Source of the DNA: Guillardia theta CCMP2712
Lineage: Eukaryota > Protista > Cryptophyta
Direction: 5' to 3'
Assembly: GCF_000315625.1 (NCBI RefSeq)
Contig: NW_005434590.1
Span: forward strand, 1 to 34,370
DNA: 34,370 nt
Shown here: in pieces, positions 1 through 2,619 of the stretch
Layout: every line of letters begins with the position of its first letter
Numbering within the stretch: the first letter of the stretch is position 1
Notes under the pieces: generated by a model
Seen by the model: only the letters and a program-made list of their open reading frames with translations
Databases searched by the model: none
Told to the model about the DNA's origin: nothing
Translations under genes and position numbers: made by a program

Positions 1-60
1 GAGAGGGAGAGGGAGAGGGAGAGGGAGAGGGAGAGGGAGGGGTGAGAGAGGGGGAGGGAG
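1..60. repeat. (GGGAGA)n purine-rich simple repeat inside an HKR intron
   Basis: gagagg tandem units are directly visible at the window start. Confidence 0.85.
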
Positions 61-220
61 AGGGAGAGAGAGGGGGGGGTGAGAGAGGGGGACGGGGACG
101 AGGAGGGGGAGGGGGAGAGTTTGACAAGGATGAAAGGGAACAGTGGAAAGAGAAGCAAGGTAGAGCCAGCCAGCCAGCCGAGGGAGGAGGAGGGAGGAGG
201 AGGAGAGAAGGAGAGAGAAC

Positions 221-2208
221 CTGGGAGAAGGGCTTGAAGAGAAGGTCCTGCTGATCTTGAGGAATCCCTTCCCCATTGTCCCAGACCTCCATGCTCAAGA
301 ACGCGGAGCCATCAGGCGCCTCCTCGAGCAGCTCGATTCTCAGCACCACCTGCCCGCCCTCGTCCTTGGCGAACTTGACGGCGTTGTCGCAGATGTTGAT
401 GAGGCACTGGCGGATACGGAAACTGTCGCCGTAGAGGCAGGGCACGCTCCCCCCCTTGTACTCCGTGCAGAGCTCGATAGCAAAGTCAACCTTGCGGAGG
501 TTGACGCGAGCCGTCAGGATGTCGCACAGCTCGTCGCAGAGGTCGGCGAGGAAGAAGGGCTTCTCCGTAAGCTCGATGCTCGATGGCAGCAGGTCCTGGC
601 GGCTGCTGCCGCTCTCCGACCCGTCCGCCTTCGATTCAAGCCGCGCGTACTCGAGCACCTGGTTGATAATGCCCAACAGGGCCTCGGCTGAGGTGAGGGA
701 GGACTTGACGTACTCGCGGTGGACAGGGTTGAGGTCGTCGGCGTCTAGGAGGAGCGAGTTGAAGGCGACGACCGAGTTGAGGGGCGTGCGGAGCTCGTGG
801 CTGATGTTGGCGACGAATCGACGGGAGAGGCGAGCGGAGGTCTCTGCCTCTACACACGCCATCTGCAGCGCTCGGTTCATCACCTCAGCCCGCAGCACCG
901 TCTTGTCCTTACTGTCCCTCTCCGCCTGCAGCTGCTTGATCCTCAGCGTCGCCACCGTGTCGAGAATGCAGAAGTTGCCAGTCAGGAGCGCGACGGTGTA
1001 CACGGCCTTGGCAACGACGTCCACGAAGGTTCGCATGATCTCGTACTGCACAAGGTCGATGCGGCGAAGGAAGTAGAGCACGTGGACGCAAGGGAAGAGC
1101 GACCATAACATGTAGGTGAACCACTCGATGCCGCGGAGGGAAGCGATCTCGTAGGTAGTCGCCGCGTTGTTGACGCTCGCGTTGGAGATCTGATGGATGC
1201 GGCGGAACACAACCACCATGCAGCATCCAGAGCAAACACAGCAAACCCAGCCGATGATGCTGGAGCCCAACATGGTCTGGACCAGCCCTAGCACAAGCAT
1301 CGTCTCGTCCCACAGGATCGCGTTCACTACCACCCCCCAGTCCTGCACAAGGACGTCCTGCATGGAGGTCCCAAGGCAAGCTAGGATCAGGATCATGATC
1401 GGGGTCGTGTTCATCCACTGTACGTAGAACTGGATCTGAACGGGGTTGCCGTCGAAGTCGAACATGAGGGGGAAGTAGTCCAAGATGGTAGAGACGTACA
1501 CGATGAAGGAGACGAGGTTGATGAAGAGAGCAAAGCTGTTCAGCGGCCGCTTCTTCGCCGACACCTGACACAAGTCACGTCAGAACGAGGAACGAGCGGC
1601 AGGGCGGCACACCTGAAAGATCATCCCCGCTAGATCCATCACGACACAGATCCCAAAGATGAAAGCAGCAAGCACCTGAGGAGGAGGAGGAAGAGAGTCA
1701 AATCCTGGCATGTTACCGAACTCAGGATCACCTTGACGAACTTGGCCTTGTCCATGATGACCTGCTCGTTCCTCGTGCCTGACGCTGACTGCTGCCTGCA
1801 GTACGCCGAGAGCTGCCGAGCACCCGAAAGTACGAGCGCGTACATGAAGCACCAGGCAATGAACAGAACGACCCCCGGGGCCTCGGAGCGGATCATTCCC
1901 AGCGACCATTTCTTGTCGGCGGTGTCTATGCGAAAGCTCCCCTGCCTCGAGCCCTTGTCGGGGGAGTGGATGAAGCTCGACTTGGACGACTTGTTGACAA
2001 ACGACGAGCTCTCGGCCTTAGCGATGGCTGACTCCTTGGTCAGCCGCGCTCTAAGGTTCTGCTCCGAAGCCGTCGATGGCCGGAAGGAAGAGGCAATGGC
2101 GACGTCTTTCTTCTCCCTGCTGGGTTCATGGCTATTCGAAGTAGAGGTATTCTCATCATGGAGAGAAGCCGAGTGGGATGACATGACTACCGACGGGTTT
2201 CCTGGCAT
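221..2208 (-). CDS. Histidine kinase rhodopsin (type-1b 8-TM microbial rhodopsin + HisKA + HATPase_c); 3' part runs off the window start
   Basis: Spliced by hand: exons ~2208..1732, 1675..1613 and 1564..221, separated by GT-AG introns 1731..1676 and 1612..1565; a donor GT follows at 220. Opsin helices: TM3 FYVQWMNTTPIMIL (~1430-1390), TM4 WDETMLVLG, TM6 LWSLFPCVH, TM7 DVVAKAVY (Lys codon 1009-1007). Kinase motifs: H-box FVANISHELRTPLN (His 799-797), N-box LINICDNAVKF, G1 DNGEGI, F-box LFKPFSQ. The true start is uncertain; an upstream exon is likely. Confidence 0.92.
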
Positions 2209-2619
2209 GCACCAGACAGACCGCACAACGTCCTCGTCCTTCTGCTTTCACGCACGCAGGAAAGAGAGTTTGAGCACCCCAGGGTTCGAGGCTCAGGAGT
2301 ATGAAGACATGGTAACGACCTGAGAAGCATGTCAAACATGGCCGACAAGGTAGGACATGTAGCTCTGAGGGAATCAAAACAATTCAACTAGATCATTATC
2401 AGCCCATCACCGCCCCTTCCCCAACAAGATCAGAAGCACCATCACTATTCCTTATCCCTCTGCTCTATCTTCACTGCACCTCCTCCCTCCTCCGCTATCC
2501 TCCCATTCCGTTCTCTCCTCCGCCTCCTCGTCCTCCTCCTCGTCCTCCTCCTCGTCCTCCTCCTGGTGTCGACATGCCATCGCTCTTGTACAGATGAAGA
2601 GAGAAAATTGAACCACCCT

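What the first reader, a model, noticed from the sequence alone, without database searches (positions are those of the whole stretch)
221..2208. Hidden rhodopsin-histidine kinase (light-gated two-component sensor) missed by the ORF track
Seen in sequence: after removing two short introns, a 448-codon exon (1564-221) carries opsin helices 2-7 with the Schiff-base motif DVVAK. A coiled-coil linker (LRIKQLQAERD...ALQMACVEAETSARL) leads directly into HisKA (SHELRTPLN) and HATPase (N, G1 and F boxes). Established knowledge: HKRs are characterised mainly in green algae (Chlamydomonas COP5-12/2c-Cyclop, Ostreococcus). Inference: this is a light-regulated kinase in a probable cryptophyte, a lineage better known for channelrhodopsins; receiver or cyclase outputs would lie left of the window.
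Basis: partly seen in the sequence, partly recalled or inferred. Interest (0 to 1): 0.85.

Follow-up and report, generated by a model that had tools for sequence, protein, structure and literature searches.

The report
Known cryptophyte rhodopsin-histidine kinase gene

Summary
Window 221-1564 (-) is one open 448-codon exon with Pfam Bac_rhodopsin (2.6e-18), HisKA (3.4e-18) and the first 63 of 111 positions of HATPase_c (3.7e-12). Two GT..AG introns (1676-1731 and 1565-1612) join it to exons 1613-1675 and 1732-2208. Spliced contigs from two separate studies confirm both introns.

The window starts at base 1 of scaffold C84 of Guillardia theta CCMP2712. The gene therefore runs off the assembly after the donor at 221. 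The G2 box and receiver domain are missing here but are present in the paralogues. No cyclase lies near those paralogues.

The gene is already published. Awasthi et al. 2020 (PMC7693036) list it as GtRh9 (jgi|Guith1|144198, fgenesh2_pg.84_#_1), with the same start, the same end and eight matching numbered residues. It is "hidden" only in NCBI, where model GUITHDRAFT_77188 (207 aa, partial) holds only the kinase part. It is also absent from the RefSeq-based list of 42 opsins of Konno et al. 2020.

No biochemistry exists for any G. theta HKR. The retinal pocket lacks both R82 (Phe) and D85 (Gln) but keeps D212 and K216.

Verdict: real and correctly interpreted, already catalogued, low novelty.

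The parts
2209..2321 (-). 5' untranslated region, as far as the transcript contigs reach
   Evidence: The spliced contig of run X1 reaches 2321 and that of X4 reaches 2278.
1732..2208 (-). Exon 1: start ATG at 2208-2206, a Ser-rich N-terminal region of about 110 aa, and an extra hydrophobic helix (TM0, aa ~111-131)
   Evidence: The frame is open from the ATG. The hydropathy peak is 2.11. The start matches the published GtRh9 sequence MPGNPSVV....
1676..1731 (-). Intron 1, 56 nt, GT..AG
   Evidence: Skipped in contigs of X1 and X4; the DNA run X12 reads through it.
1613..1675 (-). Exon 2: opsin helix A (VLAAFIFGICVVMDLAGMIFQ)
1565..1612 (-). Intron 2, 48 nt, GT..AG
   Evidence: Skipped in contigs of X1 and X4.
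980..1564 (-). Exon 3, opsin helices B-G. F226, Q229 and H341 sit at BR positions R82, D85 and W189. D362 (BR D212) is kept.
   Evidence: Pfam Bac_rhodopsin 2.6e-18. Alignment to bacteriorhodopsin chains. Residue table. AF2 model with Foldseek hit 7d7q, the Rh-PDE transmembrane domain.
1007..1009 (-). Codon AAG of the Schiff-base lysine (K366 of the model, BR K216)
   Evidence: Invariant column K186 in 46 sequences. Aligned to BR K216.
824..979 (-). Helical linker between TM7 and the DHp domain; 70 residues separate K366 from H436
   Evidence: Helices are predicted but with low pLDDT (46-54), as expected for a monomer model of a coiled coil.
632..823 (-). HisKA (DHp) domain; the phospho-acceptor His436 codon CAC is at 797-799
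   Evidence: Pfam HisKA 3.4e-18. The H and T(H+4) columns are nearly invariant.
221..430 (-). N-terminal part of HATPase_c (N, G1 and F boxes), cut at the splice donor after ..FKPFSQ
   Evidence: Pfam HATPase_c profile positions 1-63 of 111. In the paralogues the next exon carries profile positions 60-110.
1..220 (-). Start of intron 3 (GT at 220-219) in CT-rich low-complexity DNA that runs to the scaffold edge. The rest of the gene is not assembled.
   Evidence: Window = C84:1-34370. Transcript contigs stop matching at 221 and carry 60 further letters (table 8). No orphan 3' exons exist elsewhere in the genome.

Best explanation
Window 221-2208 (-) is the first three exons of GtRh9, one of at least six histidine-kinase rhodopsin (HKR) genes found here in the Guillardia theta nuclear genome. 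The protein starts with a cytosolic Ser-rich tail and an extra helix (TM0). A seven-helix microbial opsin follows, with the retinal lysine K366. A helical linker of about 50 aa leads into a DHp domain (H436) and a CA/ATPase domain. The scaffold ends inside the intron after the F box, so the G2 box and the receiver domain are missing from the assembly. Likely mechanism, by analogy with characterised HKRs (inferred, not shown): retinal isomerisation moves helix G and the dimeric linker. This changes autophosphorylation of H436, and the phosphate passes to a C-terminal receiver aspartate. No cyclase is attached, so the output after the receiver is unknown.
For: Domains. Structure: AF2 mean pLDDT 77.5; Foldseek hits GacS, RetS and HK853 for the kinase half and Rh-PDE 7d7q (TM-score by target 0.63) for the opsin half. 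One uninterrupted exon spans helix B to the F box. Transcripts: spliced contigs in X1 and X4 (two studies) cover 947-2321, and overlapping pieces cover 221-976. Catalytic and retinal residues are kept: K216, D212, W86, W182, P186, the H box, N box and G1. Paralogues are 68% identical in protein. GtRh8 on C99 has a transcript-derived protein P0179 of 958 aa with Rh, HisKA, HATPase_c and Response_reg. The GtRh10 locus has a Response_reg exon. dN/dS among the three paralogues is 0.19-0.57. Identity with GtRh9: eight of eight numbered residues and the printed sequence match. Light-inhibited kinase signalling and the 8-TM topology in green-algal HKRs come from PMC6284317.
Against: The 3' end of this gene was never seen, so a receiver domain is inferred only from the paralogues. 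No retinal binding, photocycle or kinase assay exists for any G. theta HKR (PMC7714340). The pocket lacks R82 and D85, so normal photochemistry is not assured. Logan contigs are short pieces, and the 646-976 stretch is tiled by several that share words with the paralogues, so a single continuous mRNA is very likely but not strictly proven. The raw RNA run X19 gave one read. No Hpt domain was found in the genome, so the downstream relay is open.
Confidence: 0.88

Rival explanations
1. The locus holds two genes, or only a kinase gene, as in the NCBI model GUITHDRAFT_77188. That model starts at the internal Met of MNRALQ and has no opsin.
For: NCBI lists only a 207-aa partial protein covering aa 229-448 of the exon. 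The same holds for the paralogue model GUITHDRAFT_77158, 276 aa.
Against: There is no stop codon and no intron between helix G and HisKA. Transcript contig 947-2321 already contains helix G and the start of the linker, and depth is continuous. Homologues from Chroomonas, from MMETSP transcripts and from metagenomes align as one stretch across opsin, linker and kinase.
Confidence: 0.04
2. It is a truncated or decaying duplicate at a scaffold edge that makes no working receptor.
For: The 3' exons are absent from the assembly. dN/dS of 0.3-0.57 is not very low. R82 and D85 are lost.
Against: The frame is open over 628 codons and the gene is expressed in several runs. The transcript continues 60 nt beyond the donor at 221. 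All kinase boxes and the retinal lysine are intact. F82/Q85 is shared by all three paralogues, so it is an old, retained state.
Confidence: 0.05
3. It is a two-component cyclase opsin (2c-Cyclop type) whose cyclase lies in the unassembled 3' part.
For: Several green-algal HKRs carry a cyclase (PMC6284317, PMC7693036). The 3' end is unseen.
Against: None of the 81 Guanylate_cyc matches in the genome lies on C84 or C99, or near the other HKR loci on C1, C272 and C31. The full-length proteins of GtRh8 (P0179) and GtRh4 (P0314) end after the receiver.
Confidence: 0.03

Closest known systems
GtRh9 (jgi|Guith1|144198, fgenesh2_pg.84_#_1) in Awasthi et al. 2020, Life 10:259 (PMC7693036)
   Same: It is the same gene model: same start (MPGNPSVV), same end (..LLFKPFSQ), and Q229, T233, T234, I240, D362, L346, Y354 and K366 all match. 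It is listed there as a rhodopsin with HisK but without a response regulator, which fits the scaffold cut.
   Different: Nothing in the sequence differs.
GtRh10 (C84:~200.6 kb) and GtRh8 (C99:~2.3 kb), G. theta paralogues
   Same: 68% protein identity over the big exon, the same intron after FSQ, and the same F82/Q85/H189 pocket. They group with the window gene with SH-aLRT support of 96-97.
   Different: Their loci are complete and show the G2 exon and the receiver. Position BR 96 is Val in both and Ile in the window gene.
Chlamydomonas HKR1/Cop5 and Cr2c-Cyclop1/Cop6, Ostreococcus Ot-HKR (characterised HKRs)
   Same: An opsin with an extra N-terminal helix fused to HisKA, HATPase_c and a receiver. 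The D85 position is not acidic in Cop5 (Met) or Cop6 (Gln) (PMC7693036 Table 2B; PMC6284317).
   Different: No cyclase, SAM or SMC modules. The protein is much shorter (paralogues ~960 aa against 2549 aa for Cr2c-Cyclop1). K-to-H spacing is 70 residues, against 54 in Cr2c-Cyclop1 (K298, H352). R82 is Phe. In my tree the cryptophyte clade is separate from the clade holding a chlorophyte (Nephroselmis) sequence. COP sequences themselves were not in the tree.
Salpingoeca rosetta rhodopsin phosphodiesterase (PDB 7d7q)
   Same: It is the best structural match for the opsin half (Foldseek E 7e-7, TM-score by target 0.63). It is also an 8-TM enzyme rhodopsin with a helical linker.
   Different: The output domain is a phosphodiesterase, not a histidine kinase. 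Sequence identity is 22%.

Membership tests
Histidine kinase rhodopsin (HKR) | Microbial (type 1) opsin domain with the Schiff-base lysine in helix G | tested here: met
   Pfam Bac_rhodopsin 2.6e-18. K aligned to BR K216 and D to D212. The K column is invariant in 46 homologues.
Histidine kinase rhodopsin (HKR) | HisKA/DHp domain with phospho-acceptor His fused in the same polypeptide after helix G | tested here: met
   Same open exon. HisKA 3.4e-18. H436 lies in SHELRTPLN.
Histidine kinase rhodopsin (HKR) | Complete HATPase_c (N, G1, F and G2 boxes) | tested here: inconclusive
   N, G1 and F are present. The G2 box lies in the next exon, which is off the scaffold. It is present in the paralogues.
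Histidine kinase rhodopsin (HKR) | C-terminal receiver domain (hybrid kinase) | not testable with these tools
   The 3' part is absent from the assembly. Paralogues GtRh8, GtRh10 and GtRh4 have Response_reg.
Histidine kinase rhodopsin (HKR) | Eight transmembrane helices with a cytosolic N-terminus (type Ib) | tested here: inconclusive
   An extra hydrophobic segment at aa 111-131 precedes helix A. The best fold match is the 8-TM Rh-PDE. Topology itself was not tested.
Histidine kinase rhodopsin (HKR) | Retinal binding and light-dependent kinase activity | not testable with these tools
   This needs expression and assays. None is reported for G. theta HKRs.
Two-component cyclase opsin (2c-Cyclop) | Guanylyl cyclase domain after the receiver | tested here: not met
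   No PF00211 match lies on C84 or C99 or near the other HKR loci. P0179 and P0314 end after the receiver. For the window gene itself the 3' end is unseen.

The most novel reading that the evidence does not exclude
The G. theta trio GtRh8/9/10 has neither the helix-C arginine (R82 is Phe) nor the helix-C counterion (D85 is Gln). This leaves D212 as the only charged partner of the Schiff base. It could give unusual photochemistry, such as a UV-absorbing or bistable state as in HKR1, in a compact HKR with only a receiver as output. That would be a new kind of light-switchable kinase for optogenetics.
Probability: 0.2. Interest if true: 0.5.

Novelty: already known. Interest (0 to 1): 0.2.

Why it matters
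The practical value is curation. The NCBI/RefSeq model of this locus (GUITHDRAFT_77188) and that of the paralogue at C84:~200 kb (GUITHDRAFT_77158) drop the opsin. As a result the RefSeq-based census of 42 G. theta opsins (Konno et al. 2020), including its expression study, lacks GtRh8, GtRh9 and GtRh10. Cryptophyte HKRs remain biochemically untested, and this subgroup has an uncommon pocket. They are reasonable candidates for expression, but the gene and its class are already described.

Tried and rejected
1. The look-up of encoding contigs on the NCBI proteins P0003 and P0008 returned nothing, because records of the window's own genome are left out.
2. I searched the genome for the missing 3' exons using the G2 exon and the middle region of GtRh8. 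Only known paralogues matched (C99, C84:200k, C1, C31, C272) plus an ordinary kinase on C78. No orphan copy exists.
3. The C1:~990-993 kb hit was considered as the missing 3' part. It is rejected because it is a complete, separate HKR gene with its own opsin exons.
4. The search for homologous proteins with the opsin region (length window 246-784 aa) gave one metagenomic protein and no NCBI opsin model for this locus. Searches with P0005 and P0301 found no full-length GtRh9 protein.
5. The C191 rhodopsin-like frame is not an HKR.
6. Raw RNA run X19 laid one read on the stretch and is uninformative.
7. Luck et al. 2012 (PMC3501036) is not held.
8. The Hpt family search of the genome found no match. 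Small split exons may hide it.
9. A tree with named COP5-12 could not be built. Their sequences are available only as machine-read text in a supplement, and I did not retype them.

Full report
OBSERVATION. On the minus strand, window 221-1564 translates without a stop for 448 codons. Pfam finds three domains: Bac_rhodopsin (aa 4-195, E 2.6e-18), HisKA (aa 248-311, E 3.4e-18) and HATPase_c (aa 379-448, E 3.7e-12). Only profile positions 1-63 of 111 of HATPase_c are covered. PDB sequence searches match GacS, HK853 and RetS kinases with the C-terminal half, and bacteriorhodopsin and rhodopsin phosphodiesterase with the N-terminal half. These E-values are far beyond chance.

GENE MODEL AND TRANSCRIPTS. 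Upstream there are two more exons. Exon 2 (1613-1675) encodes helix A. Exon 1 (1732-2208) encodes a Ser-rich N-terminus and an extra hydrophobic helix. Both introns (1676-1731, 56 nt; 1565-1612, 48 nt) have GT..AG ends.

Contigs of runs X1 and X4, from two different studies, skip exactly these intervals and run from 947 to 2321 and to 2278 respectively. Run X12 reads through the introns and is therefore DNA. Further contigs tile 221-976. The one covering 221-673 stops matching at 221, the predicted donor (CAG|GT), and carries 60 more letters (table 8). So the mRNA continues into an exon that the window does not hold. The opsin and the kinase lie in one exon, and depth is continuous. Nothing suggests separate transcripts.

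WHERE IT IS AND WHY IT IS CUT. The window is C84:1-34370 of an 87.1-Mb, 669-contig assembly. Source names give Guillardia theta CCMP2712. The gene runs off the scaffold start, with only 220 nt of CT-rich intron left. Searching the genome with the downstream exons of a paralogue finds only other complete paralogues and no orphan 3' end.

PARALOGUES. The genome holds at least six HKR loci:
- the window gene on C84;
- C84:200647-201993;
- C99:2302-3633;
- C1:~990.4-993 kb;
- C272;
- C31.

The two closest are 68% identical in protein and share the intron after FSQ. In them the next exon carries HATPase_c positions 60-110 (the G2 box), and later exons carry Response_reg. The transcript-derived protein of the C99 gene (P0179, 958 aa) reads Rh 139-348, HisKA 401-464, HATPase_c 530-647 and REC 821-939, with nothing further. 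None of the 81 Guanylate_cyc matches in the genome lies at an HKR locus. So the family here is opsin-kinase-receiver without a cyclase.

IDENTITY WITH A PUBLISHED MODEL. Awasthi et al. 2020 (PMC7693036) list seven G. theta rhodopsins with HisK (GtRh4-10). Five of these have RR (GtRh4-8); GtRh9 and GtRh10 do not. Their Table 2B gives GtRh9 as Q229, T233, T234, I240, D362, L346, Y354 and K366. My model starting at ATG 2208 has exactly these residues at these numbers. Ile at BR position 96 is unique to the window gene among the loci I read.

Their supplement names GtRh9 as jgi|Guith1|144198, fgenesh2_pg.84_#_1, and prints a sequence from MPGNPSVV to LLFKPFSQ. GtRh10 is jgi 144226 (the C84:200k paralogue). 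GtRh8, listed as 145205, ends ..SANPRVSPTA like the C99 gene. GtRh4 and GtRh5 are 107802 (C31) and 122016 (C272).

WHAT IS HIDDEN. NCBI holds only GUITHDRAFT_77188, partial, 207 aa, equal to aa 229-448 of the exon. For the paralogue it holds GUITHDRAFT_77158, 276 aa. Konno et al. 2020 (PMC7714340) built their list of 42 opsins from RefSeq. Their alignment file contains the helix-C word QWMNTTP only in Gt_122016 and Gt_107802, and lacks the words of the window gene and its two close paralogues. That census and its expression study therefore miss GtRh8-10. They do call Gt_122016 a putative HKR, and note that the kinase activity and physiological role of HKRs have not been shown.

RETINAL POCKET AND KINASE RESIDUES. 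I aligned the opsin to bacteriorhodopsin and tabulated 46 homologues.
- Kept: W86, T89, T90, D115, W182, P186, D212 and K216.
- Changed: R82 to Phe, D85 to Gln, D96 to Ile, Y185 to Phe, W189 to His.
- F82 with Q85 occurs only in GtRh8/9/10 and in two proteins that the tree places as near-identical copies of GtRh8 and GtRh10. Other clade members have R/E or H/Q.
- Gln at position 85 is common in modular rhodopsins (17 of 47).
- The H box, T at H+4, the N box and G1 are canonical.

I confirm R82F, D85Q and W189H.

STRUCTURE. An AF2 model of the exon, built with a 46-row alignment, has mean pLDDT 77.5. It shows six long helices, then a linker (low confidence), then two long DHp helices and an alpha/beta CA domain. 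Foldseek matches GacS, RetS and HK853 for the kinase half. For the opsin half it matches the transmembrane domain plus linker of Salpingoeca Rh-PDE, an 8-TM enzyme rhodopsin (7d7q).

RELATIVES ELSEWHERE. Colinear opsin-linker-kinase homologues occur in several places:
- Chroomonas, Goniomonas, Nephroselmis and Balamuthia (names);
- MMETSP transcripts;
- many marine metagenome contigs whose neighbouring genes are split like eukaryotic genes.

In a quick ML tree, GtRh9 joins GtRh10 (SH-aLRT 96) and then GtRh8 (97). This trio sits inside a fully supported 23-row clade with Chroomonas, GtRh4 and unnamed marine sequences. dN/dS among the three paralogues is 0.19-0.57.

MECHANISM. Shown here: the domain order, intact catalytic and retinal-binding residues, and expression. 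Inferred: light isomerises retinal on K366. Movement of helix G passes through the helical, presumably dimeric linker (70 residues from K366 to H436) to the DHp/CA pair and changes autophosphorylation of H436. The phosphate goes to a receiver aspartate in the unseen C-terminus. In Cr2c-Cyclop1 light inhibits the kinase (PMC6284317); the sign here is unknown. No Hpt domain was detected in the genome, so the step after the receiver is open.

VERDICT. The finding is correct and well read, but the gene model and its class are already published, so novelty is low. The useful residue is an annotation correction and a candidate for biochemistry.

Noticed in passing
G000:C84:200258-201993 (L026) and the NCBI proteins P0003 and P0008: NCBI models GUITHDRAFT_77188 (207 aa) and GUITHDRAFT_77158 (276 aa) start at an internal Met and drop the opsin. 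The RefSeq-based list of 42 G. theta opsins (Konno 2020) lacks GtRh8, GtRh9 and GtRh10.
   Followed up: yes
L026:6529-6681 (-): The GtRh10 locus has a Response_reg exon (E 2.4e-07) downstream of its kinase, although Awasthi et al. list GtRh10 without a response regulator. The JGI model is probably too short.
   Followed up: partly
window 824-979 compared with L026: Between GtRh9 and GtRh10 the linker has dS 0.19, against 0.67-0.75 in the opsin and kinase parts. This may reflect gene conversion between the two copies on the same scaffold. Logan contigs also break in this stretch.
   Followed up: no
G000:C1:~990400-993900 (L032): A further complete HKR paralogue. Its opsin is split by more introns, and it has Val at BR position 82 and Gln at 85.
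   Followed up: partly
whole genome G000: A six-frame search found no Hpt (PF01627) match, although there are several hybrid kinases with receivers. The relay partner is unknown, or the domain is split by introns.
   Followed up: no
P0175 / P0004 cluster; L036: An HKR 53% identical to the window protein is filed in NCBI under a Promethearchaeia (Asgard) MAG. A related marine contig has split, eukaryote-like neighbouring genes (aldolase, ankyrin), so the MAG contig is probably a mis-binned eukaryotic piece.
   Followed up: partly
P0030: A 1352-aa Balamuthia protein with Bac_rhodopsin, HisKA, HATPase_c and a weak, below-cutoff Response_reg match is named enoyl-ACP reductase in NCBI. This is an apparent misnaming, and an HKR-like protein in an amoebozoan record.
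   Followed up: no
window 1-220: CT-rich low-complexity DNA (CCCTCT-type runs) fills the scaffold edge. Similar runs occur on many other scaffolds, and this probably explains why the assembly breaks inside this intron.
   Followed up: no
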